Numbered from the stretch's first letter, positions 1 through 54,349 are shown. The stretch: DNA of 64,000 bases from Mobula birostris (GCF_030028105.1 NC_092383.1:97859604-97923603); one strand, 5' to 3'. Notes: a model not told the origin generated them from the letters alone. Numbers and translations are program-made.

Positions 1-98
1 CCGTGATCTACAGATAGAGGACATTGGTGATTATGAGGTGACTGTTACAGCAAGTTCAGGAGCACAGACTCAGAACAAAATGCGACTGAAGGTGTGCG
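1..98 (+). CDS. Gene A IgV exon 1, 3' part (CD2/SLAM-like V domain)
   Basis: Frame from base 2 reads RDLQIEDIGDYEVTVTASSGAQTQNKMRLKVC, then G|GTGAGT donor at 99 (phase 1). Exon end and following intron match gene B V1 (47761-48081). Confidence 0.85.
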
Positions 99-7155: not shown

Positions 7156-7458
7156 AATGGATGGAGACCGTGAAAGGACTTTGGGGACAGTGGGTCTCCT
7201 TACCTGCTGGGATCACAGGCGGGCTGGACGTTTCTCAGGTGGTGTGGAGAAGAGACGGAACCACAATAGCAGAATATGCAAATGGAGTCATTTCTTACTT
7301 CGGTCCTGAGGAGTACAAGCGACGGATAACTCTTTATCCCGGGAACTTCAGTCTGAAAATCCGTGATCTACAGAGAGAGGATACTGGTGATTATGAGGTG
7401 ACTGTTACACCAAGTAGAGGAGGACAGATTCAGGCGGAAATGCGACTGGAGGTAAATG
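7156..7458 (+). CDS. Gene A IgV exon 2 (CD2/SLAM-like, no canonical Cys pair)
   Basis: Acceptor CTCTTGTCTCCTCAG, 303 nt, phase 1-1, donor GTGAGT. Translation has VVWRR (C-strand Trp), FSLKIRDLQREDTGDYEV (D-x-G-x-Y without Cys), RLEV. Confidence 0.9.
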
Positions 7459-8946
7459 GTGAGTGAAGCGTTGCAGAGGGCCCAGGTTTCTTTGATTCCT
7501 CTAACACTTCCAATTAATGGGTGAAGGCAGATCCTGTGTGTTCCCCTGTTTTCTAAACCCCACTGACTGTCCGTGTCCAGAGCTGGGCTCACGGTTCCAG
7601 TGTAGTGGGATTGAGTCAGTGTGAGTCTGGAGGACACACTCACCACATCCCCGGAGGCTGGACTAGAAACTATGAAGCATTGAACTTTCAATGGGGATCC
7701 TTGTGGCTCCAAGGCTGGAGGGGATGAACAGATGGTGTGGGGGATTGGGAGATGGGCGGATGGTGTGAGGGGGGCTGGTGGTTGGGCCAAACAGTCTATA
7801 TCTGTGGGTCAGTTCAACAGATCCCTCTGTATCCCCAGGTCAAAGTCCTGGTCTTTCATGTTCAGGGATCCCATTTTCCGAGGGCACTGCTTGTGACTTC
7901 TCCAGACTGAGGTCTGAGCTCAGCAAGGTGTTTATTCCTCAGCCTTCATGCTGTACTGTGCTGCGTGAGACCCTGTGTATTCATTACACTGAATATAATG
8001 TCCCAGTGAATGACACAGTACACGGACACAACAGCACACACACACAGCAATATGGTTCCTGACTCGCTCAAACAGTAATATCACATTCACAGTAATCTCA
8101 CTCAGCAACGTTTGTCTGAGAAATCTCCTCCACCCCAGGTTTAACGGGTCCCATTGGAGGGGGGAGAATGTCAGAACGTGGGGAATGGAACATCACAGGA
8201 ACAGCTCCTCAGCCTCATGATGTGCTGCCAAACTCATTGCTAATGGAACCCAGTTAAGCTAATCCCTTCTGACTGTTCGTGTTCCATATGCCTTTATTCT
8301 CTAGACATTCATGTGTGTATGTGACAGCCTCTCAAAAGTCTCTCTGGCCTTTGCCTCTACCACCACTCCAGACAGCCCATTTCAGGCTCCCACTCCCACT
8401 CTCTGTGTGAAGAAAAACTTGCCCTGCACATCTCCTTTGAATTTACCCCTGTCACTGTAAGTGCACCATCTCCGGTATTAGACACTTTTTATTTGATTTT
8501 TAAAAATTTTTTTGAGATACACCAGGGAATAGTCCCTTCTGGGATTTGAACCACACTGCCCAGCAATCCCCTGATTGTAACCCAGCCTAATCACAGGACA
8601 ATTTATAATGACTGATTAACCATCCAATCGGTACGTGTTTGGACTGTGGGGGAAAACCAGAGCACGCAGAGGAATCCCACGTGGACACGGGGAGAATGTA
8701 CAAACTCCTTATGGGCAGCGGGAATTCAACCTGGTTCACTGGTACTGTAAAGCGTTGTGCTAACCACTACGCTATAGTACAACCCTTGGGCGGAAAAATC
8801 CTGGCTTTACAGTACCAGTTGGAAGTGATTAGCTTCTACTTTAAACGCAAACAACAGGAATTCTGCAGACGCTGGAAATTCAAGCAACACACATCAAAGT
8901 TGCTGGTGAACGCAGCAGGCCAGGCAGCATCTCTAGGAAGAGGTGC

Positions 8947-8982
8947 AGTCGACGTTTCAGGCCGAGATCCTTCGTCAGGACT
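8947..8982 (-). ncRNA. Minimal type I hammerhead ribozyme motif
   Basis: Reverse complement: AGTC-CTGACGA-AGGATCTCGGCCT-GAAAC-GTC-GACT (stem I, core, stem II, palindromic ACGT stem III, GUC cleavage triplet). Confidence 0.75.
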
Positions 8983-9078
8983 AACTGAAGGAAGAGTGAG
9001 TAAGGGATTTGAAAGTTGGAGGGGGAGGGGGAGATCCAAAATCAACTTTCAAATCCCTTACTCACTCTTCCTTCAGTT

Positions 9079-9114
9079 AGTCCTGACGAAGGATCTCGGC
9101 CTGAAACGTCGACT
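9079..9114 (+). ncRNA. Minimal type I hammerhead ribozyme motif
   Basis: AGTC 9079-82, CTGACGA 9083-89, AGG...CCT stem II 9090-9102, GAAAC 9103-07, GTC 9108-10, GACT 9111-14. Confidence 0.75.
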
Positions 9115-9998
9115 GCACCTCTTCCTAGAGATGCTGCCTGGCCTGCTGCGTTCACCAGCAACTTTTATGTGTGTAGCTTCTACTTTATCTGTGTTCTTAA
9201 AAATGTTATAAACTTCTATCAGGTCTATCCTCAACCTCAGACACTCAGAGGAAACAACCCAAATCTGTCCAATTGTTTTTCTTCCAGCACCTGCCCTATA
9301 ATCTAAGCAGTATCATGGTAAATGTCTGTACCCTCTCCAAAGCCTCCCCATCCTACCTTTAATTGGGTGGCTGGAAGTGAATGCAATACCTTAGATGTGG
9401 CCAAACCAGAATTTAAAAGATGTAGCATAAGTTCCTGACTGTTGAACTCAGTGCCTCGACTGATGAGGACAAGCATGTAAAGTCCCTTCTTTACCCCCCT
9501 GATCAACATGCAGCCACGTTTCCCCACCCATGTCTGCATCTGATCCATGTCCAGTTGCACATATTGGCGCTCCCCTGCACCATCCACAACACCACCAATC
9601 TTTATCTCATCTACAAATGTGCTAACCGTCCCATCTATATTTCTGTCCTTCGGCTCCTGAATCCTAAAATCCATTCACTGAGATCAGGGCTGGTTTGACC
9701 TTGAACTCGGCTCCACTTTCCAGCTTGTTCCCACGCCTTAAGCGACTACTCCAGATCAGATCTCTCTCAGCCTTGAATACAGTGACTCCACTGCTCTCTG
9801 GGGGAAAAAAATGGGGAGATTCCTGACCCTTGGAGAGGAGACATCATTCCTCATCTCTGTCTGAAATGGTGCTTTATTCTGAAACTGTGCCTTGTTCTAC
9901 ACCCCACACAAAGATGAACACCTCCCCAGAACCCACCTCACTCTTGATTCCTCCAGTCACTGAGCTTACCTGCTGACTGCCTCCTCTTGTCTCCACAG

Positions 9999-10086
9999 AC
10001 TGGGTGGAGACTGCGAAAGGAGTTTAGGGACATATGGTCTCTTTGCCTGGTGGGATCTCAGCCAGACTGGATGTTCCTAAGGTGGT
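9999..10086 (+). pseudogene. Truncated IgV pseudo-exon in gene A
   Basis: Intact acceptor CTCCTCTTGTCTCCACAG; reads DWVETAKGV*GHMVSLPGGISARLDVPKVV (TAG at 10025-27). Homology then jumps to sequence resembling 13170-13280, implying a deletion. Confidence 0.8.
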
Positions 10087-10221
10087 TCTGGTCCCAATAG
10101 CTTCGTCTGCACCCCTTATGAAAACGTGCTTGGTGCTCTTATTGTTGCGGAGACCAGAACTGTGCATGGTGCTCCCAGTGAGGTCCAATCCAGGGATATG
10201 GAGACCAGAATTTGGGGGTGT

Positions 10222-10392
10222 GAGAGGTGATTAAAAAGGGGACTGACGGTAATGGGTGTGTGTGAGAGGTGATTGGAAAGGGGACTGATGGTAATGGGTG
10301 TGTGTGAGAGGTTTGGAAAGGGAACTGATGGTAATGAGCGTGTGTGAGAGGTTTGGGAAGGGAACTGACGGTAATGGGCGTGTGTGAGAGGC
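10222..10392 (+). repeat. ~42-bp minisatellite (GAGAGGTGATTGGAAAGGGGACTGATGGTAATGGGTGTGTGT)
   Basis: About 4 tandem copies; same unit at 13408-13612. Confidence 0.8.
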
Positions 10393-10577
10393 AGCAGGCA
10401 TCACCTTCCTGTCTCCAACCAGCTAACAGGAATCACCTGACACTGGTTCCCAATTCTTCACTTGCAGCCTATTTTAAACCAAGCTCTCATCCACAGCCCT
10501 TGTTCATTCATCATGCCCACCAGCCTCAACCAGTTGCTCCTGGCCTTCAGTTACCTTGTTGCCTTGTCGTCTAAGAC

Positions 10578-11135
10578 ATTTTAGAACATCAAACGGTACA
10601 GCGCAGGGACAGGCCCTTTGTCCCATAATGTTATGCCTAACTAACTAAATTAGTAATCAAATGCCCAACTAAACTAATCCCTTCTGCTTACACATTGCCC
10701 ATACGCTTCCAGTTCCAGCATGTTTGTGTGCCTATCTAAACGCCTCCACCACCACCATCACGGGCAGCACGTTCCAGGCACCCACCACCCACCCTCTGTG
10801 TAAAAATACTTGCTTCACATCTCCTTCCAACTTAACCCCTGTCATCTTAAATGCATGTACTCTGCTATTAAACATTCCAACCCTGTCTGTCTACTCTATC
10901 TATGCCTCGCATAATCTGATAAACCTCTATCAGATCTTCCCTTAGCTTCTGCCACTCCAGAGGAAATAACCTAAGTTTGTCCAACATTTTTGACCCTGGA
11001 GAAAAATACAGGCTAACTACTTTATCTGTGTCCTTCAAAATTTATAAACTTATGTCAGGTCTATCTTTAACCTCTGACACTCAGAGGAAACATTCCAAGT
11101 TTGTCCAGAAATTCCTTATAGCACGTGCTTTTTAA
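10578..11135 (-). mobile_element. Old CR1 3'-end fragment
   Basis: CR1-type tail (AGAACATCAAACGGTACAGCGCAGGGACAGGCCCTT) and RT C-terminal-like sequence as in other CR1 copies here. Confidence 0.6.
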
Positions 11136-11147
11136 TCTAGGCACTCA

Positions 11148-11389
11148 CCGCCAAGGTATGATCCCAGCACGTTAGGAGACTGTCTGTCCCGAAGCTCCTT
11201 TCACAGTCCCCATCCAGTCTGAGGAGACAAGAGGAGGCAGTCAGCAGGTGAGCTTAGAGACTGGAGCAGGAATCAGAGTGAGGTGGGTTCTGAATGAGGG
11301 CACAGTTTCAAAATAAGGGACCACCATTTCAGACAGAGATGATCCCCTCGCCAAAGGTCTGGAATCAATGCAATTTTCTCCCAAAAAGA
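11148..11389 (-). repeat. Inverted duplicate of 11878-12119 (gene A V3 acceptor region plus first 71 nt of exon)
   Basis: 242-bp reverse complement, no indels, 4 mismatches found by hand; 488-nt spacer. Confidence 0.95.
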
Positions 11390-12048
11390 AATGTCTGCTC
11401 CCTATCCAAAGCCTTCACATTCTTCATATAATGAAATGACTGGAACAGAAAGCAATACTTCAGATCTCCAAACTAGGGATTTTAAGGATACAGTATAACT
11501 TCCTAATTTATGAACTCATTGCCTCAACTAAGCCAGTACCTTATTTTACCACCCTATCAATATGCAGCCACATTTCCCTGCTATTGTCTGCATCTGAGCC
11601 ATATCCAATTGCACCTATTGGCACTTCTCTCTACAATGCACAACACCACCAATCTTTATCTCATCTATAAACATGCTAACCTTCCCGTCTACATTTCTAT
11701 CCAAAGAACAGTTAGAGGCCTTAAAGGCTCACAACCCTGCTTCCTGCTCACTGAGATCAGGGTTGGGCTGATCTTGATCTTAGCTCTGCTTTCCTGCCTG
11801 TTCCCACGCCTTCCCCAACTCCTTTCCACATCAAAACTCTGTCTCAGTCCTGAACACAGGGACTCAGCCTCCACAGCTCTTTTTGGGAGAAAATTGCATT
11901 GATTCCAGACCTTTGGCAAGGGGATCATCTCTGTCTGAAATGGTAGTCCCTTATTTTGAAACTGTGCCCTCATTCAGAACCCACCTCACTCTGATTCCTG
12001 CTCCAGTCTCTAAGCTCACCTGCTGACTGCCTCCTCTTGTCTCCTCAG

Positions 12049-12351
12049 ACTGGATGGGGACTGTGAAAGGAGCTTCGGGACAGACAGTCTCCTTACGTGC
12101 TGGGATCACACCTTGGCGGGATGTTTATCAGGTGGTGTGGAGATCAAACGGAACCAGAATAGCAGAATACACAAATGGCACCATTTCCTACTTCGGTACT
12201 GAGGAGTACAAGCAACGGATAACTCTTCATCCCAGGGACTTCAGTCTGGAAATCCGTGATCTACAGAGAGAGGATGCTGGTGATTATGAGGTGGAAATTG
12301 CTGTGGGTTCTGGAGCTGAACTTAAGGCGAGAGTGCGACTGGAAGTGAACG
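12049..12351 (+). CDS. Gene A IgV exon 3
   Basis: Acceptor CTCCTCTTGTCTCCTCAG, 303 nt, phase 1-1, donor GTGAGT; VVWRSNG...FSLEIRDLQREDAGDYEVEI...RVRLEV. Counterpart of gene B V3. Confidence 0.9.
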
Positions 12352-13407
12352 GTGAGTGAGACACAGCGAGGGGCCTGGGTTTTACCAGTTCCTGAAACAC
12401 CCTAATTAATGGGTGACGGGAGATCCTGGCCATTCCACTCTTTACTGAACCCCACTGCCTGATTGTCCATGTCCAAGACATTCATTCTTGGGGGTAGAGG
12501 TGGAGAGTTTGGGAGGGTTGGTTGGAGTAGCCTGTCTGAGTATCTGCAGTGACATTGACAGGTACACAGCGGCCACTGTGTACCCCAGTGGTGGAGCTGA
12601 AATTCCCCCAGACGATAAGATAATTGCCATTGTCGATGGAACTCTAAAGAATGGACACCTCTCAAGTGAATCATGTTTGCATCACCCTGATCCACAGATC
12701 CTGGGACAGAGATCCACCTAGTTCTGTAGCACAGGTCTTCAGTACCACACCTGGGTGTAGTCTGGTCCCATAGTTGTTGCTGTATCCAGTAAGCTGATGT
12801 CACAGGGAATGAACTGAATTGTCTGGAGACTGGTTTTTGTGATGGGGGATCTCAGGAGGAAGCTGAGGGAGATCGTCCACTCAGCACTTCTGTCTGAACA
12901 TGGATGTGAATGATCAGCCTTATCTCTGGCACTCACACGCTGGGTCGCACCGTCAGTGAGGGAGGGGATGTTTATAGAGACTCCACCTCCCATCAGCTGT
13001 TGTCCATGACCAGATGTAAGGGGACTGTGGAGCTTTGATCTGATCTGTGGGGTGTGGGATCCCTCAGCTCAGTTTCCTCCGGCTTTGCTGTTGAACTTAC
13101 ACTTTATCCTGTGTTACAGCTTCACCAGGTCGGCACCTCACCATTTTTAGAATTCCTTGGGCGGCTCCCAGTAGGTCCCTCTGCATCCTTCATCAAAACG
13201 TATTTGGTGCTGTCAGTGTTACATGGGCCAGAACTGTGTAGTTTTCCCAGTGAGGTCCAATCCAGAGATATGGAGACCAGATCAGTGCACAGTGCTCCCA
13301 GCGTGGTCTCACAGGGATATGAAGACAAGATCTGTGTACAGAGCTCCCAGTCTGTAATAAACCAGGGATATAGAGAGTAGAACTCGGGCTTAAAAGAAAT
13401 ACTCGGA

Positions 13408-13612
13408 ACGGGGACTGACGTTAATGGACATGTGTGAGAGGTTATTGCAAAGAGACTGACAGTAATAGGAGTGTGTGAGAGGGAACTGATGGTAATTGGT
13501 GTGTCTGAGAGGTGATTGGAAGGGGGACTGACGATAATGGGTTTGTGTGGGAGGTTTAGAAAGGGGACTGACAGTAATGGGTGTGTTTGAGAGGTGATTG
13601 GAAAGGCGACTG
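13408..13612 (+). repeat. ~42-bp minisatellite
   Basis: About 5 degenerate copies of GAGAGGTGATTGGAAAGGGGACTGACRGTAATGGGTGTGT. Confidence 0.8.
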
Positions 13613-17624: not shown

Positions 17625-19147
17625 CAGGTGTCCTCCGCTTTTCGAATGTTCACTTTACGAAACCTCACTGTGACGAAAAACCTACATTAATACCCTGTTT
17701 TCGCTTTCAGAAGGTGTTTTCACTGTTATGAGGAAAGGCAGGCGTGAAAAAATCGGTGCGTGATAAAAGGCAGCGCGCGCGCCGAGCAGCCGCTGTCCCT
17801 CGGATTCGGAACGGCATTGCTTTAACACGTTGCATTGAGCAGCCGTTAGCAAGATGATTTCAAAGGTGTCGGAAAAGCCTGAAAGAGTAAGGGTGTTACA
17901 CAGCGTAAAACTAGACATAATTAAGCATTTCGATCGTGGTGGATGAAGCAAGGACAAAGCTTCTGGAAGTTGACGAAGATGATGTTGAAGAGGTTTTGGC
18001 ATCCCATGACCAAGAACTGATAGATGAAGAGCTGATGCAATTGGAAGAGGAAAGGATAACAATCGAAACCGAATGCAACCGAAGGCAGAAAGTGAAGCAA
18101 CTGCGTGAGATTTTCGCTGCAATGATAAAGTATGACTTTAATTTTGAAAGGGTACGCAGGTTTAGGGGATATTTGCAGGATGGTTTGAGTGCTTACAAAC
18201 AACTGTATGATAGAAAAATGCGCGAGGCTGAGCAGTCAAGCAAGCCTTCCACATCAGCCACAGCAGACGACGAACCTCAACCTTCGACATTGAGGTGGGC
18301 AGCCATAGGAGAAGGTGAGCTGCCTGCCTTGATCGACAATGAGATGTCCCACCACCCCAACACCTGGGCCCCGGACAGATACTGTACCGATTTGCGAAGA
18401 ACGCAGCGGTAGCCAGGAGGCATACAGCACATCTTTAAGAAAAAAGCCGAAATAAACATGCTAATTAATTAGGTGCCGCCTAGCACGTAATTGTCGCCTC
18501 TGATCTGCGCCGACACTTACGTGCCGGGCAGCACCTAATTAATTAGCATGTTTATTTCGGCTTTTTTCTTAAAGATGTGCTGTGTGCCTCCAGCCTACTG
18601 CTGCATTCTTCGCGGCAATGTATCGGGTTGGCGGCCCAGAGGGTGGGAGCCACTGTAACACCCAGCCTGCGACAACTCAGTCTAACACACCATCATCAGT
18701 GTGCTCAGCGCTGTTTTCCCAATTCCGGTAAGTGATACTACACTGTACATACATTATTTCTACTTTATATAGGCTGCGTATTTTTACGTGTTATTTGGTA
18801 GATTTGGCAGCTTCATAGTTTAAAGGTTACTGGAGAGCGCATTTATGCCAACAGCGCTTGCGTGAGATTTTCGCTATGGAGATCTGTGCAGGCAATCGTT
18901 GTAGAGAAGTATTTCTACTTTATATAGGCTGTGTATTTATCATATCATTCCTGCTTTTACTATATGTTACTGATATTTTAGGTTTTATGTGTTATTTGGC
19001 ATGATTTGGTAGGTTATTTTTGGGTCTGCGAACACTCACAAAATTTTCCCATATGAATAAATGGTAATTGCTTCTTCACTTCACGACATTTCGGCTTATG
19101 AACCGTTTCATAGGAACGCTCTACCTTCGGATGGCGGGGGAAACGTG
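17625..19147 (+). mobile_element. Tigger/pogo-like DNA transposon, internally deleted
   Basis: Imperfect TIRs CAGGTGTCCTCCGCTTTTCGAA and (rc) CACGTTTCCCCCGCCATCCGAA, TA at the right end. N-terminal HTH-like VKLDIIKHFDRG fused to C-terminal EDDVEEVLASHDQELIDEEL. Confidence 0.8.
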
Positions 19148-20868: not shown

Positions 20869-21021
20869 ATCCTGCTGACAGATCGTCACACGCTGCTTGG
20901 ATCATTCCCCTCGTTGTGATACTCATTCTGTTACTTGTGTGTTGCTGTATATATAGAAAGAGGGAGTATCTTCGCTCACACTGGGACAAATGTATGGGAA
21001 AGAAATCCGGAACATCTGACG
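20869..21021 (+). CDS. Gene A transmembrane exon (TM1)
   Basis: Acceptor TCTTTTCTCCTCCCCAG, 153 nt, phase 1-1, donor GTAGGT. DPADRSSH-AAWIIPLVVILILLLVCCCIY-RKREYLRSHWDKCMGKKSGTSD: hydrophobic span plus basic stop-transfer. Confidence 0.85.
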
Positions 21022-21240: not shown

Positions 21241-23995
21241 TGGGGCGGAGGAGAGGGAGGGGCTTTGGGAATGGGGGGAGAAGGAGGAGGAGGGGAGGGT
21301 CTGGGGAGTAGGGAGGAGGAGGGGATGGTCTGGGGAGTAGGGAGGAGGAGGGGTGTCTGGGGAGTGGGGAGGGGCTTTGGGAATGGGAGGAGGAGGAGGA
21401 GAGGGTCTGGGGGAGTAGGGAGGAGGAGGGGAGGGTCTGGGGAGTAGGGAGGAGGAGGGGAGTGTCTGGGGCAGTAGGGAGGAGGAGGGGAGGGTCTGGG
21501 TGAGTAGGGAGGAGGAGAGGCCGTTCTGGGTGAGTAGGGAGGAGCAGGGGAGAATCTGGGGAGGAGGAGGGGTGGGTCTGGGGAGAGGGGAGGAGGAGGG
21601 GAGGGTCTAGGAGCAGAGATGAGGAGGGGAGTTTCTGGGGGAGCAGGGAGGAGGAGGGGAGGGTCTGGGAGAGTAGTGAGGAGGAGGGGAGGGTCTGGGG
21701 GAGTAGGGAAGAGGAGGGGAGGGTCTGGGGAAGAGGAGGGGATGGTCTGGGGAGTAGGGAGGAGGAGGGGAAGGTCTGGGGAGTAGGGAGGAGGAGGGGA
21801 AGGTCTGGGGAGTAGGGAGGAGCAGGGGAGAGTCTGGGGAGGAGGAGGGGAGGGTCTGGGGAGAAGAGAAGTGGAGGGGAGGGTCTGGGGAGTAGGGAGG
21901 AGGAGGGGAGTTTCTGGGGGAGTAGGGAGGAGGAGGGGAGGGTCTGGGAGAGTAGTGAGGAGGAGGAAAGGGTCTGGGGGAATAGAGAGGAGGAAGAGGG
22001 TCTGGGAGAGTATGGAGAAGGAGGGGAGGGTCTGGGGGAGTAGGGGAGGGTCTGAGGAGGAGGAGGGGAGGGTCTAGGGAGTAGGGAGGAGGAGGGAAGG
22101 GTCTGAGGAGTAGGGAGGAGAAGGAGAGTGGGGGAGTAGGGAGGAGGTGGGGAGTGTCTGGGAGAGTAGGGAGGAGGTGGGGAGTGTCTGGGGGAGTAGG
22201 GAGGAGGTGGGGAGTGTCTGGGGGAGTAGGGAGGAGGAAGGGAGTGTGTAGGAGTAGGGAGGAGGAAGGGAGTGTCTGAGGGAGGAGGGGAGTGGGGAGT
22301 AGGGAGGAGGAGGGAAGTGTCTGGGGGAGTAGGGAGGTGGAGGGGACGGTCTGTGTGAATAGGAAGGAGGAGGGGAGGGTCTGGGAGAGCAGGGAGGAGG
22401 AGGGGAGGGTCTGGGGGAGTAGGGAGGAGGAGGGGAGGTTCTGTGAGAGAAAGGTGGAGGAGGGGAGGTTCTGGGAGTAGGGAGGATGAGGGGAGTGTGG
22501 GGGAGGAGGAGGGGAGTGTCTGGGGAGTAGGGAGGAGGAGAGGATGGTCTGGGGGAGTAGGGAGGAGGTGGGGAATGTCTGGGGAGTAGGGAGGAGGAGG
22601 GGAGTGTGGGGGAGGAGGAGGGGAGTGTCTGGGGAGTAGGGAGGAGGAGGGGATGGTCTGGGGGAGTAGGGAGGAGGAGGGGAGGGTCTGGAGGAGGGTC
22701 TGGGGAGGAGGAGTGGAGTTTCTGGGGGAGCAGGGAGGAGGAGGGGACGGTCTGGGAGTGTAGGGAGGAGGAGGGGAGGGTCTGGGGGAGCAGGAAGGAG
22801 GAGGGGAGTTTCTGGGGGAGCAGGAAGGAGGGGGGAGGGTCTTGGGGAATAGAGAGGAGGAGGGGAGGGTCTGGGAGAGTATGGAGAAGGAGGAGAGTGT
22901 GTAGGGAGGAGGAGGGGAGGGTCTGGGGGAGTAGGGAGGAGGAGGGGAGGGTCTGGGTGAGTAGGGAGGAGGAGGGGAGGGTCTGGGTGAGTAGGGAGGA
23001 GGAGGGGAGGGTCTGGGTGAGTAGGGAGGAGGAGGGGACGTTCTGGGTGAGTAGGGAGGAAGAGGGGACGTTCTGGGTGAGTAGGGAGGAGGAGGGGAAG
23101 GTCTGGGGAGTAGGGAGGAGCAGGGGAGTGTCTGGGGAGGAGGACGGGAGGGTCTGGGGAGTAGGGAGGAGGAGGGGAGGGTCTGGGGAGTAGGGAGGAG
23201 GTGGGGAGTGTCTGGGGAGGAGGAGGGGAGGGTCTGGGGAGTAGGGAGGAGGAGGGGAGGGTCTGGGGAGTAGGGAGGAGGAGAGGGGGGAGGGTCTGGG
23301 GAGTAGGGAGGAGGTGGGGAGTGTCTGTGGGAGTAGGGAGGAGGAGGGGAGTGTCTGGGAGTAGGGAGGAGGAGGGGAGTGTCTGGGGAGAAGGGAGGAG
23401 GAGGGGAGGGTCTGGGAGAGTAGAGAGGAGGGTGGGAGGGTCTGGGGGAGTAGGGAGGAGGAGGAGGGGAGGGTCTGGGAGAGTAGGGAGGACGAGCGGA
23501 GGGTCTGGGAGAGTACGGAGGGGTGTGTCTGCGGTCAGGGAGGAAAATGGGAGGATCTGGGGGAGGAGGAGAGGAGGGTCTGTGTGAATAGGAAGGAGGA
23601 GGGGAGGGTCTGGGAGAGCAGGGAGGAGGAGGGGAGGGTCTGGGAGAGTAGGGAGGAGGAGGGGAGTGTCTGGGAGAGTAGGGAGGAGGTGGGGAGTGTG
23701 GGGGAGTAGGGAGGAGGAAGGGAGTGTCTAGGAGTAGGGAGGAGGAGGGGAGGGTCTGGGAGAGTAGGGAGGAGGAGGGGAGGGTCTGGGAGAGTAAGGA
23801 GGAGGAGGGGAGGGTCTGGGGGAGTAGGGAGGAGGAGGGGTGTCTGGGATAGTAAGGAGGAGGAAGGGAGGGTCTGTGGGAATAGGGAGGAGGAGGGGAG
23901 GGTCTGGGAGAGTAGGGAGGAGGAGGGGAGGGTCTGGGGAGTAGGGAGGAGGAGGGGAGGGTCTGAGGGAGCAGGGAGGAGGAGTGGAGGGGCTG
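21241..23995 (+). repeat. G/A-rich minisatellite, unit about GAGTAGGGAGGAGGAGGGGAGGGTCTGGG(G), 29-30 bp
   Basis: About 2.75 kb of tandem degenerate copies, very C-poor on the + strand. Confidence 0.95.
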
Positions 23996-24074
23996 AGGCA
24001 GTGCATTGGAGGGATGTATGTATCAATCAGGAAAGGCACTGATGGGGCCTCCTCACCTCTGCTCTCTGTCTCAG

Positions 24075-28369: not shown

Positions 28370-28740
28370 GAGAGAAGGTGGGAGAAGAGGTGAACACTGG
28401 TGATAGAGGATTCACTGGTTAAAGGGACAGAAGAGATTCTGTGGATGAAAACATGTCTAACAGATGTTATGTTGCCTTCCAGGTGCCAGGGTCAGAGACA
28501 TCACTGAGTCCGTTGCATTCTTAACAGGAAAGGTGAGGAGCCAGAAGTCAGGGTCCACATCAGTACCAGTCACAGAGGCAGAAAGGGTGATGAACTCCTG
28601 TAAAGTGCATTCAGGGAGTGAAGTGCTACGTTAAAGGACTCTTGCCACATGCTGGTGAGGCCAGAACTAGGAGGACAATGTGGCTAAAGAGATGGTGCAA
28701 CAGGAGGAATTCAGATACTTGGATCATTGGATTCTCTTCC
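28370..28740 (+). mobile_element. CR1 ORF1 esterase-domain fragment
   Basis: GTGATAGAGGATTCACTGGTTAAAGGGACAGAA...TGTTGCCTTCCAGGTGCCAGGGTCAGAGAC (GDSL-like and CCLPGARVRD motifs). Confidence 0.65.
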
Positions 28741-44777: not shown

Positions 44778-45290
44778 ACCAACTCAGGTTGGAGGAACCA
44801 CTCCTTCTGTTCCGTCTGGGTAGCCTCCAACCTGATGGCATGAACATTGACTTCTCTAACTTCTGTTAATGCCCCACCTCGCCCTCGTACCCCAGCCCTT
44901 ATTTATTTATTTATTTTCCCTCTTTTTTTTGTCCCCCCCCCTCTTTTTTCTCCCTCTATCTCTCTCACTATAACTCCTTGCCCATCCTCTGGGTACCCCT
45001 TCCCCTTTCTTTCTCCCTAGGCCTCCTCTCCCATGATCCTCTCCCTTCGCCAGCCTCTTATCCCTTATGCCAATCACCTGTCCAGCTCTTGGCTCTATCC
45101 CTCCCCCTCCTGTCTTCTCCTATCATTTTGAACCTCCCTCTCCCAGTCCCACTCCCACTTTCAAATCTCTTACTAACTCTTCTTTCAGTTAGTCCTGACG
45201 AAGGGTCTCGGCCCGAAACGTCAACTGAACCTCTTCCTAGAGATGCTGCCTGGCCTGCTGCGTTCACCAGCATTTTTTGTGTGTGTTGCG
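44778..45290 (+). mobile_element. Penelope-like element 3' end (GIY-YIG C-terminus plus terminal repeat)
   Basis: QLRLEEPLLLFRLGSLQPDGMNIDFSNFC* followed by a pyrimidine-rich UTR and a hammerhead motif. Confidence 0.8.
45191..45226 (+). ncRNA. Minimal hammerhead ribozyme motif (core intact, one stem I mismatch)
   Basis: AGTC-CTGACGA-AGGGTCTCGGCCC-GAAAC-GTC-AACT. Confidence 0.65.
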
Positions 45291-47070: not shown

Positions 47071-47760
47071 CACCCACGTGACTTCATCCAGCATCTTCCA
47101 GCCAGTTCTCCTTCCCCTCTCCCCATAGGAAGCGAGAACCAAAGATACTACATTTACTAAAAGTTAACAAACAGGTGATAATTCAAACAGAATCTCAAAA
47201 AGAAAGCTAAAACAACAAGGAAAAGGACAATTAAAAAACAAAAATTGTAGACCTTAATCCAACAACGTCATGTTAATCCGACAATGTCACTGTGAAGAAC
47301 CAGTGGTCAGGGTCAGCCGAGAGGACCAGTGCCACGGTCGACCTCTGCAGAAGCACAGTGTGGACGAGCTTCATTCTGTACATGACCTGTGCACTGGGAG
47401 TGGGTGAAGGGACAGTGTAGTCGGTGGTTTCCCGTATTCCCTCATTGTGTTCACTCTCTCCAAACACTACAAACCTTTTCTCCAGACTGGAGCCCATTTG
47501 CTATGTCTCTGCCTCCCTGTCATGACAATCGATATCTGGCTGCAGGCTGCAACTCCCTTCCTCAGGGCCGGGTGTGGAGTGTCTTCACTCTGTTCCCCTG
47601 GTGGGCTCACTGTGTGATGTAGGAACTGTGTGCCGGGTCTCTCTCAGGGACGGGAGCCAGATGATGGGCCGCATGGCCTGCTCCTGTAACTGTGATCCTC
47701 CCGGCTCTGATTCTACAGTTACTGAATTCACCTGCTGACTGTCTCCTCTTGTCTCCTCAG

Positions 47761-48081
47761 CTGAGACTGGGGATTCCCCGACCACTGTGAACGGAACTTG
47801 GGGACAGTCGGTCTCCTTACCTCCTGGGATCCCAATCGGACCGGACGTTGCTGAGCTTGTGTGGAGACGGTTGTCACCCAGGGTGAAGATAGTGACATAT
47901 TCAAAGAAGATCAGTGACTATTACGGTTCTGAGGAGTACAAGCGACGGATAACTTTTCATCCCGGGAACTTCAGTCTGGAAATCCGTGATCTGCAGAGAG
48001 AGGACACTGGTGATTACGAGGTGACTGTTACAGCAAGTTCAGGAGCACAGGCTCAGAACAAAATGCGACTGGAGGTGTACG
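47761..48081 (+). CDS. Gene B IgV exon 1 (N-terminal domain)
   Basis: Acceptor CTCCTCTTGTCTCCTCAG, 321 nt, phase 1-1, donor GTGAGT; (A)ETGDSPTTVNGTWGQSVSLPPG...LVWRR...DLQREDTGDYEV...RLEVY. Confidence 0.9.
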
Positions 48082-50221
48082 GTGAGTGAGACGCCTCGGA
48101 GGGGCCCGGGTTTCATCAGTTCCTGAAGCACCCCAATTAATGATCCTGTGTGTTCCCCTGTTTACTGAACCCACTGACTGCCGGTGTCCAGAGCTGGGCT
48201 CACGGTCCTAGTGTAGTGAGGCTGAGTCAGTGTGAGTCTGGAGGACACACTCACCACATCCCCGGAGACTGAACCAGAGGCTGTGAAGCATCAAACTGTC
48301 AATGGGGAACCTCGTGACTCTGAGGCTGGAGGAGCTGAGCAGATGGGGAAGGGGGAACAGGAGATAGGCTGATCTGGTGGGAGGGACTGGTCGATGGGCT
48401 GAACAGTCTATATCTGTGGGTCAGTTAAACAGATCCCTCTGTATCCCCAGGTCAAAGGCCTGGTCTGTCATGTTCAGGGATCCCATTTTCAGAAGGCACT
48501 GCTTGTTAATTGCCCAGACTGAGGTCTGAGCTCAGCAAGGTGTTTATTCCTCAGCCTTCATGCTGTGCTGTGCTGAGTGAGACCCTGTGTGTTCATTACA
48601 CTGAATATAGTGTCCCAGTGAGTGACACAGTACACGGACACAACAGCACACTCACACACAGCAATATGGTTCCTGACTCACTCTAACAGTAATATCACAT
48701 TCACAATTACCTCACTCAGCAACGTTTGTCTGAGAAATCTCCTCCACCCCAGGTTTAACGGGTTCCATAGGAGGGAGGAGAATATCAGAACGTGGGGAAT
48801 AGAACGTCACAGGAACAGCTCCTCAGCTCATGATGTGCTGCCAAACTCATTGCTAATGGAATCCAGTTAAGCTAATCCCTTCTGACTGTTCGTGTTCCAT
48901 ATGCCTTTATTCTCTACACATTCATGCGTGTACGTACAGCCTCTCAGAAATCTCTCTGGCCTTTGCCTCTGCCACCACTCCAGACAGCCCATTTCAGGCT
49001 CCCACCCCCACTCTCTGTGTGAAGAAAAACTTGTCCCGCACATCTCCTTTGAATTTACCCCTGTCACTGTAAATGCACCATCTCCGGTATTAGACACTTT
49101 TTATTTGATTTTTTAAAATTTTTTTGAGATACACCAGGGAATAGTCCCTTCCGGGATTTGAACTACACTGCCCAGCAATCCCCTGATTGTAACCCAGCCT
49201 AATCACAGGACAATTTATAATGACTGATTAACCATCCAATCAGTACGTGTTTGGACTGTGGGAGGAAACCAGAGCACGCAGAGGAATCCCACGTGGACAC
49301 GGGGAGAATGTACAAACTCCTTACGGGCAGTGGGAATTCAACCTGGTTCACTGGTACTGTAAAGTGTTGTGCTAACCACTACGCTATAGTGCCACCCCTG
49401 GGAAAAAATCCTGTCTGTCTATCATCTGTGTCTTAAAAATGTTATAAACTTGTATCAGGTCAATCCTCAACCTCCGGCACTGTGAGGAAACAACCAACAT
49501 TTGTCCAAACTTTTCCTCCAGCACATGCCCTGTAATCCGGGCACAATGATGGTAAATGTCTGTTCCCTCTCCAAAACCTCCACATTCTTCCTTTAATGGG
49601 GTGGCTGGAAATGAATGCAATACTCCAGATGTGGCCTAATTGGAATTTTTAAAGATGTAGCATAACTTCTTGCCTTTTGAACTCAGTGCCTCGACTGATG
49701 AGGACAAGCATGTAAAATCCCTTCTTTACCCCCCGATCAACATGCAGCCACGTTTCCCCACCCATGTCTGCATCTGATCCATGTCCAATTGCATCTATTG
49801 GCACTCCTCTGCACCATCCACAACACCAACAATCTGTTGGAGGCCTTTGGCCCACCTGGAGCCTATTCCCCACTTACTGAAATCAGGGTTGGTCTGACCT
49901 TGATCTCAGCTCTACTTTCCTGCCTGTTTCCACCCTCTCCCCAAATCCTCTCCAGATCAAAACTCTGTCTGAACCTTGAATACAGTGACTCAGCCTCCAC
50001 AACTCTCTGGGGAAGAAAATTCCATCGATTCCTGAACCTTAGAGAGGAGAAATCCTTCCTCATATCTGTCTGAAATTATACTCCCTTATTCTGAAACTGT
50101 GCCCTCATTTTAGATCATACAGGAGGGGGAAACGTCCTCCCAACACCCACCTCACCCCGATTCCTGCTCCAGTCACTGAACTCACCGGCTGACGGCTGAC
50201 TGCTTCCTCTTGTCTCCTCAG

Positions 50222-50524
50222 AGTGGATGGGGACCGTGACAAGAGCTTGGGGACAGTTGGTCTCCCTACCTGCTGGGATCACACGCGGGCTGGACGTTTC
50301 TCAGGTGGTGTGGAGAAGAGATGGAACCACAATAGCAGAATATGCAAATGGAGTCATTTCTTACTTCGGTCCTGAGGAGTACAAGCGACGGATAACTCTT
50401 CATCTCGGGAACTTCAGTCTGGAAATTCGTGATCTACAGATAAAGGACACTGGTTATTACGAGGTGACTGTTACAGCAAGTTCAGGAACACAGACTCAGA
50501 ACAAAATGCGACTGGAGGTGTACG
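50222..50524 (+). CDS. Gene B IgV exon 2
   Basis: Acceptor CTTCCTCTTGTCTCCTCAG, 303 nt, phase 1-1, donor GTGAGT; central part nearly identical to gene A V2. Confidence 0.9.
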
Positions 50525-52280
50525 GTGAGTGAAGCGTTGCAGAGGGGCCCAGGTTTCTTTGGTTCCTCTAACACTTCCAATTACTGGCTGAGGGCAGATC
50601 CTCTGTGTTCCCCTGTTTACTGAACCCCACTGACTGCCCGTGTCCAGAGCTGGGCTCACGGTCCCAGTGTAGTGGGGTTGAGACAGTGTGAGTCTGGAGG
50701 ACACACTCACCACATCCCCTGAGACTGGACCAGAGACTGTGAAGCATCGAACTGTCAATGGGGAACCTCGTGACTCTGAGGCTGGAGGAGATGAGCAGAT
50801 GGTGTGGGGGAACAGGAGATAGGCCAATCTGGTGGGAGGGGCTGATGACTGGGTCGAACAGTCTATATCTGTGGGTCTTTTCAACAGATCCCTCCGTATT
50901 CCCAGGTCAAAGGCCTGGTCTTTCATGTTCAGGGATCCCATTTTCAGAAGGCACTGCTTGTTAATTCCCCAGACTGAGGTCTGAGCTCAGCAAAGTGTTT
51001 ATTCCTCAGCCTTCATGCTGTGCTGTGCTGAGTGAGACCTTGTGTGTTCATTACACTGAATATAGTGTCCCAGTGAGTGACACTGTACACGGACACAACA
51101 GCACACTCACACACAGCAATATGGTTCCTGACTCACTCTAACAGTAATATCACATTCACAATAATCTCACTCAGCAACGTTTGTCTGAGAAATCTCCTCC
51201 ACCCCAGGTTTAACGGGTTCCATTGGAGGGGGGAGAATGTCAGAACATGGGGAATAGAACGTCACAGGAACAGCTCCTCAGCTCATGATGTGCTGCCAAA
51301 CTCATTGCTAATGGAACCCAGTTAAGCTAATCCCTTCTGACTGTTCGTGCTCCATATGCCTTTATTCTCTACACATTCATGTGTGTATGTACAGCCTCTC
51401 AAAAATCCCTCTGGCCTTTGCCTCTATCACAACTCCCGGCAGCCCATTTCAGGCTCCCACTCCCACTCTCTGTGTAAAGAAAAACTTGCCCTGCACATCT
51501 CCTTTGAATTATACCATCTCTGTAAATGCACCATCTCCGGTGTTAGACAATTATATTTGTTTTTTTATATTTTATTGAGATACACCAGGGAATAGTCCCT
51601 TCCAGGATTTGAACCACACTGCCCAGCAATCCCCCGATTGTAACCCAGCCTAATCACAGGACAATTTATAATAACCAATTAACCATCCAATCGGTACGTG
51701 TTTGTTGTAGGAGGAAACCAGAGCACGCAGAGGAATCCCACGTGGACATGGGGAGAATGTACAAACTCCTTATGGGCAGCGGGAATTCAACCTGGTTCAC
51801 TGGTATTGTAAAGCGTTGTGCTAACCACTACGCTATCATGCAACCCTTGGGGAAAGAATACTGGCTGTCTACTTTATCTGTGTTCTTATAAATGTTAAAC
51901 ACTTGTATCAGGTCTATCCTCAACCTCCAACACTGTGAGGAAACAACCAAAATTATCCAACTTTTTCTTCCAGCACATGCCCTGTAGTCCAGGCACCCAG
52001 ATGGTAAATGTCTGTTCCCTCTCTAAAGCCTCCACGTTCTTCCTTTAACGGAGTGGCTGGAAATGAATGCAATATTCCAGATGTCGCTGAATCAGAGTTT
52101 TTAAAGGTGTAGCATAACTTCTGGACTTTTGAACTCACTGCACCGACTGATGAGGACAAGCATGTAAAATCCCTTCTTTACCCCCCAATCAACATGCAGC
52201 CACGTTTCCCCACCCACGTCTGCATCTGATCCATCCAATTGCATCTATTCTCTGTACCCTCCACAACACCACCAATCTTT

Positions 52281-53530
52281 GTAGAACATAGAACATAGAA
52301 TAGTACAGCACAGTACAGGCCCTTCGGCCCACAATGTTGTGCTGACCATCAAACCCTGCCTCCCATATAAGCCCCCAACTTAAATTCCTCCATATACCTG
52401 TCTAGTAGTCTCTTAAACTTCACTAGTGTATCTGCCTCCACCACTGACTCAGACAGTGCATTCCACACACCAACCACTCTCTGAGTAAAAGACCTTCCTC
52501 TAATATCCCCCTTGAACTTCCCACCCCTTACCTTAAAGCCATGTCCTCTTGTATTGAGCAGTGGTGCCCTGGGGAAGAGGCGCTGGCTATCCACTCTTAT
52601 CTATTCCTCTTATTATCTTGTACACCTCTATCATATCTCCTCTCATCCTCCTCCTCTCCAAAGTGTAAAGCCCTAGCTCCCTTAATCTCTGATCATAATG
52701 CATACTTTCTAAACCAGGCAGCATCCTGGTAAATCTCCTCTGTACCCTTTCCAATGCTTCCACATTCTTCCTATAGTGAGGTGACCAGAACTGGACACAG
52801 TACTCCAAGTGTGGCCTAACCAGAATTTATAGAGTTGCATCTTTACATCGCGACTCTTAAACTCTATCCCTCGACTTATGAAAGCTAACACCCCATAAGC
52901 CTTCTTAACTACCCTATCCACCTGTGAGGCAACTTACAGGGATCTGTGGACATGTACCCCGTGATCCCTCTGCTCCTCCACACTACCAAGTATCCTGCCA
53001 TTTACTTTGTACTCTGCCTTGGAATTTGTCCTTCCAAAGTGTACCACCTCACATTTCTCCGGGTTGAACTCCATCTGCCACTTCCCAGCCCACTTCTGCA
53101 TCCTATCAATGTCTCTCTGCAATCTTTGACAATCCTCTACACTATCTACAACACCATCAACCTTTGTGTCGTCTGCAAACTTGCCAACCCACCCGTCTAC
53201 CCCCACATCCAAGTCGTTAATAAAAATCACGAAAAGTAGAGGTCCCAGAACAGATCCTTGTGGGACACCACTAGTCACAATCCTCCAATCTGAATGTACT
53301 CCCTCCACCACCACCCCTCTGCCTTCTGCAGGCAAGCCAATTCTGAATCCACCTGGCCAAACTTCCCTGGATCCCATGCCTTCTGACTTTCTGAATAAGC
53401 CTACCGTGTGGAACCTTGTCAAATGCCTTACTATAATCCATATAGATCACATCCACTGCGCTAACCTCATCTATGTGCCTGGTCACCTCCTCAAAGAACT
53501 CTATCAGGCTTGTTAGACACGATCTGCTCT
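52281..53530 (-). mobile_element. Young CR1 3' fragment in the gene B V2-V3 intron
   Basis: (AGAACAT)n tail, [20 protein letters not shown]. The paralogous intron near 9600 has the empty site ACCAATCTTTATCTCATCTACA. Confidence 0.9.
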
Positions 53531-54349
53531 CATCTACAGGCTTGTTAGACATGATCTGCCCTTATCTCATCTACAAACATCCTAACCCTCCCATCTGTAT
53601 TTCTATCCAAGGAACAGTGAGTGGCCTTTCACCCACCTCGAGCTGACTCCCCACTCACTGAATTCGGGGTTGGTCTGACCCTGATCTCAGCTCCACTTCC
53701 CTGCCTCTTTCAAAGGTTCAGAGTTTCAATTTAATGACAGAGAAATGTATACAATATACATCCTGAAATGCTTTTTCTTTGCAAAACATCCACAAAAACA
53801 GAGAAGTGCCCCAAAGAATGAACGACAGTTAAACGTGAGAACCGCTAAGATCCCCCCCCTAGCTCCCCCTTCCAGCGTGTAAGCGGTGGCGAGCAACAAT
53901 CCCCCTATCCCCGACTCCTCTTCAGACTAAAATGCAAGAGAGAACCAGTAAATAAAACCCAAGCTGGGTTCACAGAAAACAAGTCATTACCAAGATGTAG
54001 TGATATCTAATTCCCAGTAAACACTCTCAATTTAACCCATGCAATTCCAGGCATACAGATGACAGGTAATGATGTTTAAAGATATCACTACCCTCAGAAT
54101 TATATCCCTCTCAGCTTTGAATACAGTGACTCAGCACCTCTCTGGGGGAGAAAATTCCTCTGGTTCCTGATCCTTGGAGAGGGGAAATTGTTCCTCATCT
54201 CCGTCTGAAATTATGGTCTCTTATTCTAAAACTGTACCCTTGTTCTAGATCCCACAAGAGGGGGAAACACCCTCCCAACACCCCCCTCACTCTGATTCCT
54301 GCTCCAGTCACTGAGCTCACCTGCTGACTGCCTCCTCTTTTCTCCTCAG

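What the first reader, a model, noticed from the sequence alone, without database searches (positions are those of the whole stretch)
11148..12119. 242-bp inverted duplication that could base-pair over the gene A V3 splice acceptor
Seen: 11148-11389 is a roughly 98% identical reverse complement of 11878-12119, covering the branch region, pyrimidine tract, AG and first 71 nt of V3, with a 488-nt spacer. It is absent from gene B. Established: long pre-mRNA duplexes covering splice sites promote skipping and ADAR editing. Inference: a recent rearrangement created a cis-antisense switch; because V3 is phase 1-1, skipping would give an in-frame two-domain receptor from gene A while gene B keeps three.
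Basis: partly seen in the sequence, partly recalled or inferred. Interest (0 to 1): 0.7.

Follow-up and report, generated by a model that had tools for sequence, protein, structure and literature searches.

The report
Backward copy hiding a splice site
A giant manta ray immune-receptor gene carries, inside an intron, a backward copy of the start of its third domain exon; this could fold the RNA and hide that exon's splice site, and a transcript model lacking exactly that exon exists, but cause and effect were not shown.

Summary
Window 11148-11389 is the reverse complement of 11878-12119: 242 nt, 4 mismatches, 488-nt spacer. The right arm covers 171 nt of intron (candidate branch point, pyrimidine tract, AG) plus the first 71 nt of exon V3 (12049-12351, 303 nt, phase 1-1).

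The left arm is a clean, non-transposon insertion into a conserved intronic unit. It replaces about 4 nt and has no target-site duplication. Each arm carries two derived substitutions, so it looks like a real, roughly 1.7%-old inverted micro-duplication, not an assembly artefact.

The gene is a CD2/SLAM-like receptor with three V domains, most likely from Mobula birostris. Its five annotated isoforms include one (P0165) that lacks exactly the 101 residues of V3. Four keep V3, and one of those skips V1. Gene B has one model with three V domains.

An earlier scan note (s1-145944, untested) reports a same-sized 242-bp stem 270 kb upstream.

Verdict: a new member of a known kind, of moderate interest.

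The parts
11148..11389 (+). Left arm: an inverted (antisense) copy of the V3 acceptor region, inserted into the V2-V3 intron of gene A.
   Evidence: It is 242 nt with 4 mismatches to the reverse complement of 11878-12119. The flanks 10994-11147 and 11389-11529 are contiguous in four paralogous intron units, so this is an insertion.
11390..11877 (+). 488-nt spacer, the loop of the predicted hairpin. It is native intron sequence of the V-exon repeat unit.
   Evidence: It is homologous to 9320-, 49554-, 1540- and 52006- in the paralogous units.
11878..12119 (+). Right arm, the source copy: 171 nt of intron plus the first 71 nt of exon V3. It contains the CUGAC branch-point consensus at 12023-12027, the pyrimidine tract 12028-12046 and the AG at 12047-12048.
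   Evidence: It shares the 9-nt and 31-nt deletions of this unit with the left arm, so the copy was taken from this very unit.
12049..12351 (+). Exon V3 of gene A: an intact 303-nt, phase 1-1, V-set Ig domain.
   Evidence: Pfam V-set 1.3e-08. It is present in isoforms P0207, P0208, P0206 and P0204 and absent from P0165. It is 96-97% identical to the M. hypostoma orthologue P0161.
7156..7458 (+). Exon V2 of gene A.
   Evidence: tblastn of the gene A isoforms gives 100% identity. The splice signals are the same as those of V3.
1..97 (+). 3' end of exon V1 of gene A. The rest of V1 and the leader lie upstream of the window.
   Evidence: The translation equals P0165 residues 90-121.
9927..10086 (+). 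Truncated pseudo-V acceptor and exon fragment in the same intron. It is a second, weaker sense partner for the left arm (84% over 107 nt).
20869..21021 (+). Transmembrane exon of gene A. It is joined to V3 in most isoforms and directly to V2 in P0165.
28482..28631 (+). Last coding exon (cytoplasmic tail) used by P0207, P0165 and P0204.
17713..17760 (+). Alternative terminal coding exon used after V3 in isoform P0206, a form without a transmembrane segment.

Best explanation
This is a genuine, lineage-specific inverted micro-duplication in the V2-V3 intron of a manta ray CD2/SLAM-like receptor gene with three V domains.

Shown: a 242-bp piece spanning the V3 branch region, pyrimidine tract, AG and 71 nt of exon was copied in reverse orientation and inserted 488 bp upstream. 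It replaced about 4 nt, left no target-site duplication, and has at most 1 nt of junction microhomology.

Inferred: this came from a replication template switch or from end-joining capture, not from transposition.

Predicted: in the pre-mRNA the two arms form a 242-bp, nearly perfect double-stranded stem that buries the V3 3' splice signals.

Inferred: the stem forms in only part of the transcripts. In those it lowers V3 recognition and contributes to the in-frame V1-V2-TM isoform, while most transcripts still include V3. I read it as a by-product of mutation that modulates splicing, not as an evolved on/off switch.
For: The arms are real and have sharp ends. The left arm interrupts sequence that is contiguous in four paralogous units. 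Both arms share the unit-specific 9-nt and 31-nt deletions. Each arm carries two derived substitutions, three transitions and one transversion, so both have evolved since the copy was made.

The arms match no transposon, only the V-acceptor paralogues. The predicted MFE of 11100-12170 is -605.6 kcal/mol with the stem intact, and the arm-arm duplex is -502 kcal/mol.

Both arms lie in one intron of one transcription unit. Isoform P0165 equals P0207 minus exactly the 101 V3 residues, and every other residue is identical. Gene B, the M. hypostoma orthologue P0161 and the paralogue P0205 show no V3-less model.

The literature supports the general mechanism. dsRNA over the Py-tract or splice sites blocks U2AF65 access or masks the sites (PMC7404189). 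Inverted intronic repeat pairs promote exon skipping (PMC13019027). MMBIR and short-range template switching make inverted copies (PMC2621351 and PMC7954356).
Against: Four of five annotated isoforms keep V3, so the stem cannot be an efficient block. The same gene has a V1-skipped isoform, and a sister-species paralogue has an exact 101-aa V-exon skip. Skipping therefore happens in this family with no known hairpin.

The V3 splice signals are as strong as those of V2. The 488-nt loop and upstream decoy partners (the pseudo-V fragment and the V2 acceptor) could reduce stem formation in vivo, as could RNA helicases (my own knowledge).

The word shares of the same-species DNA runs (0.89-0.94) are also what an allele without the arm would give (0.90). 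They therefore do not confirm the arm independently.
Confidence: 0.5

Rival explanations
1. The duplication is real but neutral for splicing. The stem rarely forms, or is unwound before it matters, because of co-transcriptional 3' splice-site recognition, helicases and the long loop. The V3-less isoform is then ordinary leaky skipping of a symmetrical Ig exon.
For: Four of five isoforms include V3. V1 skipping occurs in the same gene, and an exact 101-aa V-exon skip occurs in M. hypostoma LOC134355363 X1/X2. The V3 splice signals are canonical and identical to those of V2. The four arm differences fit neutral drift, and nothing suggests that pairing is being maintained. Run X15 holds 0.19 of the words, exactly what the V3 exon alone would give (0.196), which fits mature mRNA containing V3.
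Against: A 242-bp duplex of -502 kcal/mol directly over the branch point, Py-tract and AG is far longer than structures known to affect splicing. Inverted Alu pairs of similar length, at kilobase distances, do form in vivo and alter splicing (PMC13019027, PMC11263572). The only annotated V3-less model in this gene set belongs to the gene that carries the arm.
Confidence: 0.35
2. The inverted copy is a selected cis-antisense switch, possibly regulated by ADAR or helicase levels, that lets gene A alternate between three-domain and two-domain receptors.
For: The predicted two-domain product exists as an annotated isoform. V3 itself is well conserved, with 3 of 101 residues different from the M. 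hypostoma orthologue, so the exon is kept while being optional. An earlier scan note reports a same-sized 242-bp stem 270 kb upstream (s1-145944, untested). If that copy is paralogous, the structure has been retained in two genes.
Against: There is no evidence of selection on complementarity: four unpaired substitutions and no compensatory change. There is no tissue or condition data. Retention in a recent segmental duplicate needs no selection. The likely paralogue P0205 has no V3-less model.
Confidence: 0.08
3. The main consequence is RNA editing or dsRNA handling, not skipping. The exon-intron duplex acts like an editing-site complementary sequence. ADAR would then edit the arms, including the first 23 codons of V3, or the intronic hairpin would be processed or retained.
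For: The duplex contains 71 nt of coding sequence paired to intronic sequence, the classic architecture of ADAR recoding sites (my own knowledge). Long perfect dsRNA is an ADAR substrate (PMC11263572, PMC7404189). The RNA-labelled runs X9 and X10 hold 0.46-0.52 of the words of 10950-12450, more than the exon alone (0.196). That matches exon plus right arm plus flanking intron (0.39-0.46), so unspliced or retained RNA around the stem may be present.
Against: No reads could be laid, so no A-to-G differences were seen. The run kinds are guesses by the tool. The annotated proteins match the genomic V3 exactly.
Confidence: 0.1
4. The left arm is an assembly or chimeric-read artefact and does not exist in the animal.
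For: I obtained no independent read confirmation. The DNA-run word shares cannot separate presence from absence.
Against: A fold-back chimera would reverse everything beyond the turn, whereas this is a 242-bp insert in otherwise collinear sequence. The arms differ at four sites, and at two of them the left arm keeps the ancestral base that the adjacent source has lost. A copy made from the same molecule could not do that. The differences are substitutions, not homopolymer indels. A second locus with the same structure is reported in this genome (s1-145944, untested).
Confidence: 0.05

Closest known systems
Splice-site sequestration by a pre-mRNA hairpin (engineered hairpins over splice sites; dsRNA between GA-rich sequence and the Py-tract that blocks U2AF65, reviewed in PMC7404189)
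   Same: An intramolecular duplex covers the branch point, pyrimidine tract, AG and the start of the exon. The expected outcome is skipping of a symmetrical cassette exon. The antisense arm is purine-rich opposite the Py-tract.
   Different: At 242 bp the stem is far longer than typical regulatory stems. It arose from a self-copy of the acceptor, not from chance complementarity. Its effect has not been demonstrated here.
Inverted Alu (IRAlu) pairs that promote loop-out exon skipping or circRNA formation (PMC13019027, PMC11263572)
   Same: The arms are long (about 250-300 nt), nearly perfect inverted repeats within one pre-mRNA. They are lineage-specific in origin, are ADAR substrates, and are associated with skippable exons.
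   Different: The arms here are not transposons. They do not bracket the exon: one arm overlaps the acceptor and the loop holds only intron, so the mode would be masking, not loop-out. The true IRAlu-like layout in this window is in gene B (LINE ends 52282-52828 / 56956-57501 around B-V3).
ADAR editing-site complementary sequences (exon-intron duplexes such as the GluA2 Q/R site; my own knowledge)
   Same: Coding sequence is paired to a nearby intronic complement in the same transcript.
   Different: Editing was not tested. The known ECS duplexes are short, imperfect and conserved, whereas this one is long, nearly perfect and young.
Template-switch / MMBIR-type inverted duplications (PMC2621351, PMC7954356)
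   Same: The copy is inverted and placed within a few hundred bp of its source. There is no target-site duplication, a small deletion at the insertion point, and it is not a transposon.
   Different: Junction microhomology is only 0-1 nt, so end-joining capture of a fragment is equally possible. The 242-bp size lies between the short-range (tens of bp) and the kilobase-scale events usually described.

Membership tests
Splice-site-masking pre-mRNA hairpin | Two complementary segments lie in the same transcript. | tested here: met
   Both arms lie in the V2-V3 intron and V3 exon of gene A, as mapped with its annotated isoforms. The predicted stem is intact in both the MFE and centroid structures.
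Splice-site-masking pre-mRNA hairpin | The duplex covers the branch point, Py-tract or splice site of the affected exon. | tested here: met
   The right arm 11878-12119 contains CUGAC (A at 12026), the Py-tract 12028-12046, the AG at 12047-48 and 71 nt of exon. The branch point is assigned from the consensus only.
Splice-site-masking pre-mRNA hairpin | The masked exon is skipped in some transcripts. | tested here: met
   P0165 equals P0207 minus exactly the 101 V3 residues. These are annotation models; I did not see the reads behind them.
Splice-site-masking pre-mRNA hairpin | The skipping depends on the duplex. | not testable with these tools
   This needs a minigene, or a comparison with an arm-less allele or species. 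V-exon skipping also occurs without a known hairpin.
Inverted transposon pair (IRAlu-type) loop-out skipping | The arms are two transposon copies in opposite orientation. | tested here: not met
   The arms match only the gene's own V-acceptor paralogues, not dispersed repeats.
Inverted transposon pair (IRAlu-type) loop-out skipping | The arms lie in the introns on both sides of the exon. | tested here: not met
   The left arm is upstream, the right arm overlaps the acceptor, and the loop is purely intronic.
Template-switch / MMBIR inverted duplication | An inverted copy lies close to its source, with no target-site duplication. | tested here: met
   The copy sits 488 bp from its source. The insert replaces about 4 nt (TGGT, by comparison with unit 9255-9380) and nothing is duplicated at the ends.
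Template-switch / MMBIR inverted duplication | There is microhomology at the switch points. | tested here: inconclusive
   0 nt at the left junction and 1 nt (A at 11389) at the right junction.
ADAR exon-intron editing duplex (ECS type) | A-to-I editing occurs in the paired exon or intron. | not tested
SLAM/CD2 family receptor (host gene) | It has an N-terminal V-set domain of the 2B4/CD2 type without the canonical intradomain disulfide. | tested here: met
   For P0207, V-set scores 6.5e-26 (three stretches) and Receptor_2B4 scores 40.4 bits against a cut-off of 21. The V domains have no paired cysteines. Relatives in other rays are named Ly-9-like or SLAM family.
SLAM/CD2 family receptor (host gene) | It has a membrane-proximal C2-set domain and ITSM (TxYxxV/I) motifs in the tail. 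| tested here: not met
   The architecture is V-V-V-TM with no C2-type hit. Neither of the two tail tyrosines (IYRKR, EYLRS) fits an ITSM or ITIM (sequence). I therefore call the gene CD2/SLAM-like, not a SLAM member.

The most novel reading that the evidence does not exclude
The inverted self-copy is a retained regulatory element, present in two paralogous manta receptor genes. It works as an ADAR- or helicase-sensitive device that toggles the receptor between three and two V domains, and it may also direct A-to-I recoding of the first 23 codons of V3. That would be a germline-encoded, RNA-level way of diversifying an immune-receptor ectodomain in a cartilaginous fish.
Probability: 0.07. Interest if true: 0.75.

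Novelty: new member of a known kind. Interest (0 to 1): 0.4.

Why it matters
If the stem really lowers V3 inclusion, this would be a clean natural case in which one small DNA rearrangement, with no transposon involved, turned a constitutive Ig-domain exon into an optional one and changed the domain count of an immune receptor. It comes with built-in comparisons: gene B, a close paralogue and a sister species. That would make the birth of an alternative exon by RNA structure directly testable with existing RNA-seq and a simple minigene. If the stem has no effect, the case shows how well vertebrate splicing tolerates a 242-bp duplex lying over a 3' splice site.

Tried and rejected
**Read laying.** I sent window:7000-12700 with runs X1, X5, X10 and X12, so as to include V2 and catch V2-V3 junctions. 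No DNA junctions, splice junctions or editing could therefore be examined.

One search ran the local repeat finder over the whole window by reference, and my scripts used a local BLAST database of the window built earlier.

**Orthologue and paralogue DNA.** The look-up of encoding contigs for P0161 (M. hypostoma) and P0205 (a same-chromosome paralogue) returned gene ranges but no DNA, because the files were too large.

**Independent contigs through exact ORFs.** The V3 ORF and the spacer ORF are not on record.

**Short transcript-derived protein fragments spanning V2-TM or V3-TM.** None were found.

**Rfam scan of 10500-12800.** Only two chance-level hits appeared, far below their gathering scores.

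**Word shares of DNA runs as proof of the arm.** I rejected this. An arm-less allele would still give 0.90, against the observed 0.89-0.94.

**Transposon origin of the arms.** Rejected.

**The pseudo-V fragment as source of the left arm.** Rejected: it is 84% identical, against 98% for V3, and the unit-specific deletions are shared only with V3.

Full report
**Observation.** The inverted repeat is real. The repeat finder reports arms at 11148-11394 and 11873-12119 with 98% complementarity. A base-by-base check places the true arms at 11148-11389 and 11878-12119. They are 242 nt long with four mismatches (11158/12109, 11173/12094, 11322/11945, 11349/11918) and a 488-nt spacer, and complementarity ends abruptly on all four sides. 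The sequence puts the AG at 12047-12048 and the exon at 12049-12351 (303 nt, phase 1-1, GT at 12352). The right arm therefore contains 171 nt of intron and the first 71 nt of the exon. It includes a CUGAC branch-point consensus with its A at 12026, 22 nt before the AG, and the pyrimidine tract.

**Host gene.** The exon encodes a V-set Ig domain (Pfam).
- A full-library HMMER search found three-V-domain membrane proteins of rays, named Ly-9-like or SLAM-family-like, as the closest relatives.
- Proteins listed without source names, on a 99,800,974-bp contig of assembly GCA_030028105.1, are the window's own products. Named neighbours on that contig are from Mobula birostris, the giant manta ray.
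- Mapping these models onto the window gives gene A as follows: V1 ends at 97, V2 is 7156-7458, V3 is 12049-12351, an alternative terminal exon is 17713-17760, the TM exon is 20869-21021, and the last coding exon is 28482-28631.
- Gene B has its leader at 39742-, V1 at about 47760-48080, V2 at about 50221-50523 and V3 at about 54349-54651. Its TM exon lies beyond the window.
- The architecture is V-V-V-TM with no C2 domain and no ITSM (and the sequence). I call the gene CD2/SLAM-like and do not file it as a SLAM member.

**Origin of the left arm.** A BLAST of 10500-12700 against the window shows that each V exon sits in a repeated intron-exon unit.
- The sequences flanking the left arm (10994-11147 and 11389-11529) are contiguous in the paralogous units at about 1381-1682, 9180-9400, 49490-49620 and 51845-52280. 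Alignments show the 242 bp replacing about 4 nt (TGGT, by comparison with the nearest unit at 9255-9380).
- There is no target-site duplication, and junction microhomology is 0-1 nt.
- The arms match only V-acceptor paralogues, not dispersed repeats. They share the 9-nt and 31-nt deletions peculiar to the V3 unit, so the copy was taken from the adjacent V3 acceptor itself.
- This pattern fits a replication template switch or MMBIR-type event, or end-joining capture (PMC2621351, PMC7954356). It does not fit transposition.

**Age, and the artefact question.** Polarising the four differences against five paralogues shows two derived changes in the right arm (G>A at 11918 and 11945) and two in the left arm.
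- The left arm thus keeps ancestral bases that its source has since lost. A chimeric copy of the same molecule could not do this.
- The differences are substitutions, not homopolymer indels.
- A fold-back chimera would also invert everything beyond the turn, whereas this is a 242-bp insert in collinear sequence.
- Arm divergence is 1.65% (Poisson 95% interval 0.45-4.2%). DNA runs under a second species label hold 0.59-0.60 of the sampled 31-mers, which corresponds to about 1.65% divergence. The event is therefore roughly as old as that species split, and I cannot say on which side of it the event falls.
- I put the chance of an artefact at about 5%. No independent read evidence was obtained. 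I modelled the word shares and found that an allele without the arm would still score 0.90, so the 0.89-0.94 of the same-species DNA runs proves nothing.
- An earlier scan note (s1-145944) reports a finding of identical size (972 letters, 242-bp stem) 270,519 bases upstream in the same genome. A close paralogue (P0205; 369 of 378 residues identical to P0207 in a global alignment) lies on the same chromosome. If these are the same locus, the insert predates a gene duplication. I could not fetch that DNA, so this remains a lead.

**RNA structure.** Folding 11100-12170 as RNA gives -605.6 kcal/mol, with the whole 242-bp stem present in both the MFE and centroid structures. The arm-arm duplex alone is -502 kcal/mol. 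Three further points come from the sequence.
- The left arm is also complementary to a truncated pseudo-V fragment earlier in the same intron (9951-10057, 84% over 107 nt), and more loosely to the V2 acceptor. Both are transcribed before V3, so they could act as decoys that delay pairing with V3.
- Read on the sense strand, the left arm carries strong 5'-splice-site-like motifs: CAG|GTGAGC at 11247/11248 and AAG|GTATGA at 11155/11156. No annotated isoform uses either.
- The stem's loop is purely intronic, so the expected mode is masking of the acceptor. It is not loop-out of an exon or circRNA formation.

**Is V3 skipped?** The protein collection holds five products of gene A.

| Isoform | Length | Composition |
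|---|---|---|
| P0207 | 425 aa | V1-V2-V3-TM-tail |
| P0208 | 378 aa | V1-V2-V3-TM, short tail |
| P0206 | 341 aa | V1-V2-V3 plus the alternative exon, no TM |
| P0165 | 324 aa | V1-V2-TM-tail (V3 absent) |
| P0204 | 318 aa | leader-V2-V3-TM-tail (named isoform X5) |

- A global alignment shows that P0165 is P0207 minus exactly 101 residues, the V3 exon, with every other residue identical.
- Gene B has one model (P0163) with three V domains. The M. hypostoma orthologue (P0161, 96-97% identical in V3) has one model that includes V3. The paralogue P0205 also includes V3.
- From my knowledge of the NCBI pipeline, alternative isoforms are normally called only with transcript support. I did not see the underlying reads.
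- Against a strong effect: four of five isoforms keep V3; the same gene also skips V1; and M. hypostoma LOC134355363 isoforms X1 and X2 differ by an exact 101-aa V exon. Skipping of these symmetrical exons is thus a family trait.
- The V3 splice signals are canonical and identical to those of V2.

**Hints from run indices (inference only).** Among runs the tool guesses to be RNA, X15 holds 0.19 of the words of 10950-12450, exactly what the V3 exon alone would give (0.196). X10 and X9 hold 0.46 and 0.52. These match exon plus right arm (0.39), or that plus about 100 nt of downstream intron (0.46). This fits mature mRNA containing V3 in one sample and unspliced or retained RNA around the stem in others. 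It cannot be confirmed without laying reads.

**Comparison with what is known.**
- Masking of Py-tracts and splice sites by dsRNA, including ADAR-bound duplexes between GA-rich sequence and the Py-tract, is established (PMC7404189).
- Inverted Alu pairs promote exon skipping and are lineage-specific sources of new isoforms (PMC13019027; PMC11263572).
- This element would work like these, but it is not an inverted-transposon pair: the arms are a self-copy and do not bracket the exon, so both membership tests were not met.
- It also has the layout of an ADAR exon-intron editing duplex. Editing was not tested.
- Gene B's V3 is bracketed by a 547-nt, 96-97% inverted pair of LINE 3' ends (52282-52828 and 56956-57501), which is the true IRAlu-like layout. 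Gene B is therefore not a structure-free control.

**What failed.** I kept those letters out of every later database, pattern, paper and findings search. DNA of the orthologue and of the paralogue could not be fetched. Exact-ORF look-ups and a search for short transcript-derived protein fragments found nothing. Rfam gave only chance-level hits.

**Verdict.**

| Claim | My estimate |
|---|---|
| The inverted micro-duplication is real | about 0.9-0.95 |
| It is real and contributes measurably to V3 skipping | about 0.5 |
| It is real but neutral for splicing | about 0.35 |
| It is a selected switch | about 0.08 |

- The structure can mask the V3 acceptor. The predicted isoform exists, but V3 is usually included and causality is untested.
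- It is a new member of a known kind, a cis RNA duplex over a splice site that arose here by self-copy, and of moderate interest.
- Its main value is as a natural experiment that existing data could settle.

Noticed in passing
window 52282-52828 and 56956-57501: A 547-nt inverted pair, 96-97% complementary, of LINE 3' ends brackets gene B's V3 exon (about 54349-54651). The upstream arm is 1.5 kb from the exon and the downstream arm 2.3 kb. This is the classic layout for loop-out exon skipping or circRNA formation, yet gene B has only a three-V model. It makes gene B an imperfect control for the finding.
   Followed up: partly
window 9180-10086 (pseudo-V fragment about 9927-10086): A partial, older duplicate (about 70% identical) of the V3 intron-exon unit lies in the same intron and is truncated about 40-90 nt into the V exon. 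Its acceptor region is 84% complementary to the left arm over 107 nt and could compete with V3 for pairing.
   Followed up: partly
window 8882-9018 and 9043-9179: A 137-nt palindrome, 99% complementary with a 24-nt loop, lies in the V2-V3 intron of gene A. A related copy sits at 45139-45289 (90%). It is probably a fold-back or MITE-like element.
   Followed up: no
window 11245-11253 and 11153-11161: Read on the sense strand, the left arm contains 5'-splice-site-like motifs: CAG|GTGAGC and AAG|GTATGA. In the second motif the derived G>A at 11158 makes GTG into GTA. No annotated isoform uses either.
   Followed up: no
window 21336-24000: A long array of diverged 30-nt tandem repeats lies just downstream of gene A's TM exon. 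It translates into GRRRG/EEEG-like runs in some frames, and its meaning is unknown.
   Followed up: no
window 10213-10392 and 13385-13482: Short arrays of a 40-42-nt tandem repeat (GGGGACTGACGGTAATGGGTGTGTGTGAGAGG-like) flank the V3 unit on both sides.
   Followed up: no
gene A isoforms (window 1-28631): Gene A has five annotated products, including a V1-skipped form (P0204) and a form without a TM segment that ends in exon 17713-17760 (P0206). Domain number and membrane anchoring both vary.
   Followed up: partly
same chromosome, outside the window: A very close paralogue of gene A (P0205, 378 aa; 369 of 378 residues identical to P0207) lies on the same chromosome. Scan note s1-145944 reports a same-sized 242-bp stem 270,519 bases upstream. 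These may be the same locus.
   Followed up: no
window 58500-63000: An LTR-retrotransposon-like block with integrase and reverse-transcriptase ORFs (60398-62965, + strand) lies downstream of gene B's V3, probably in its V3-TM intron.
   Followed up: no
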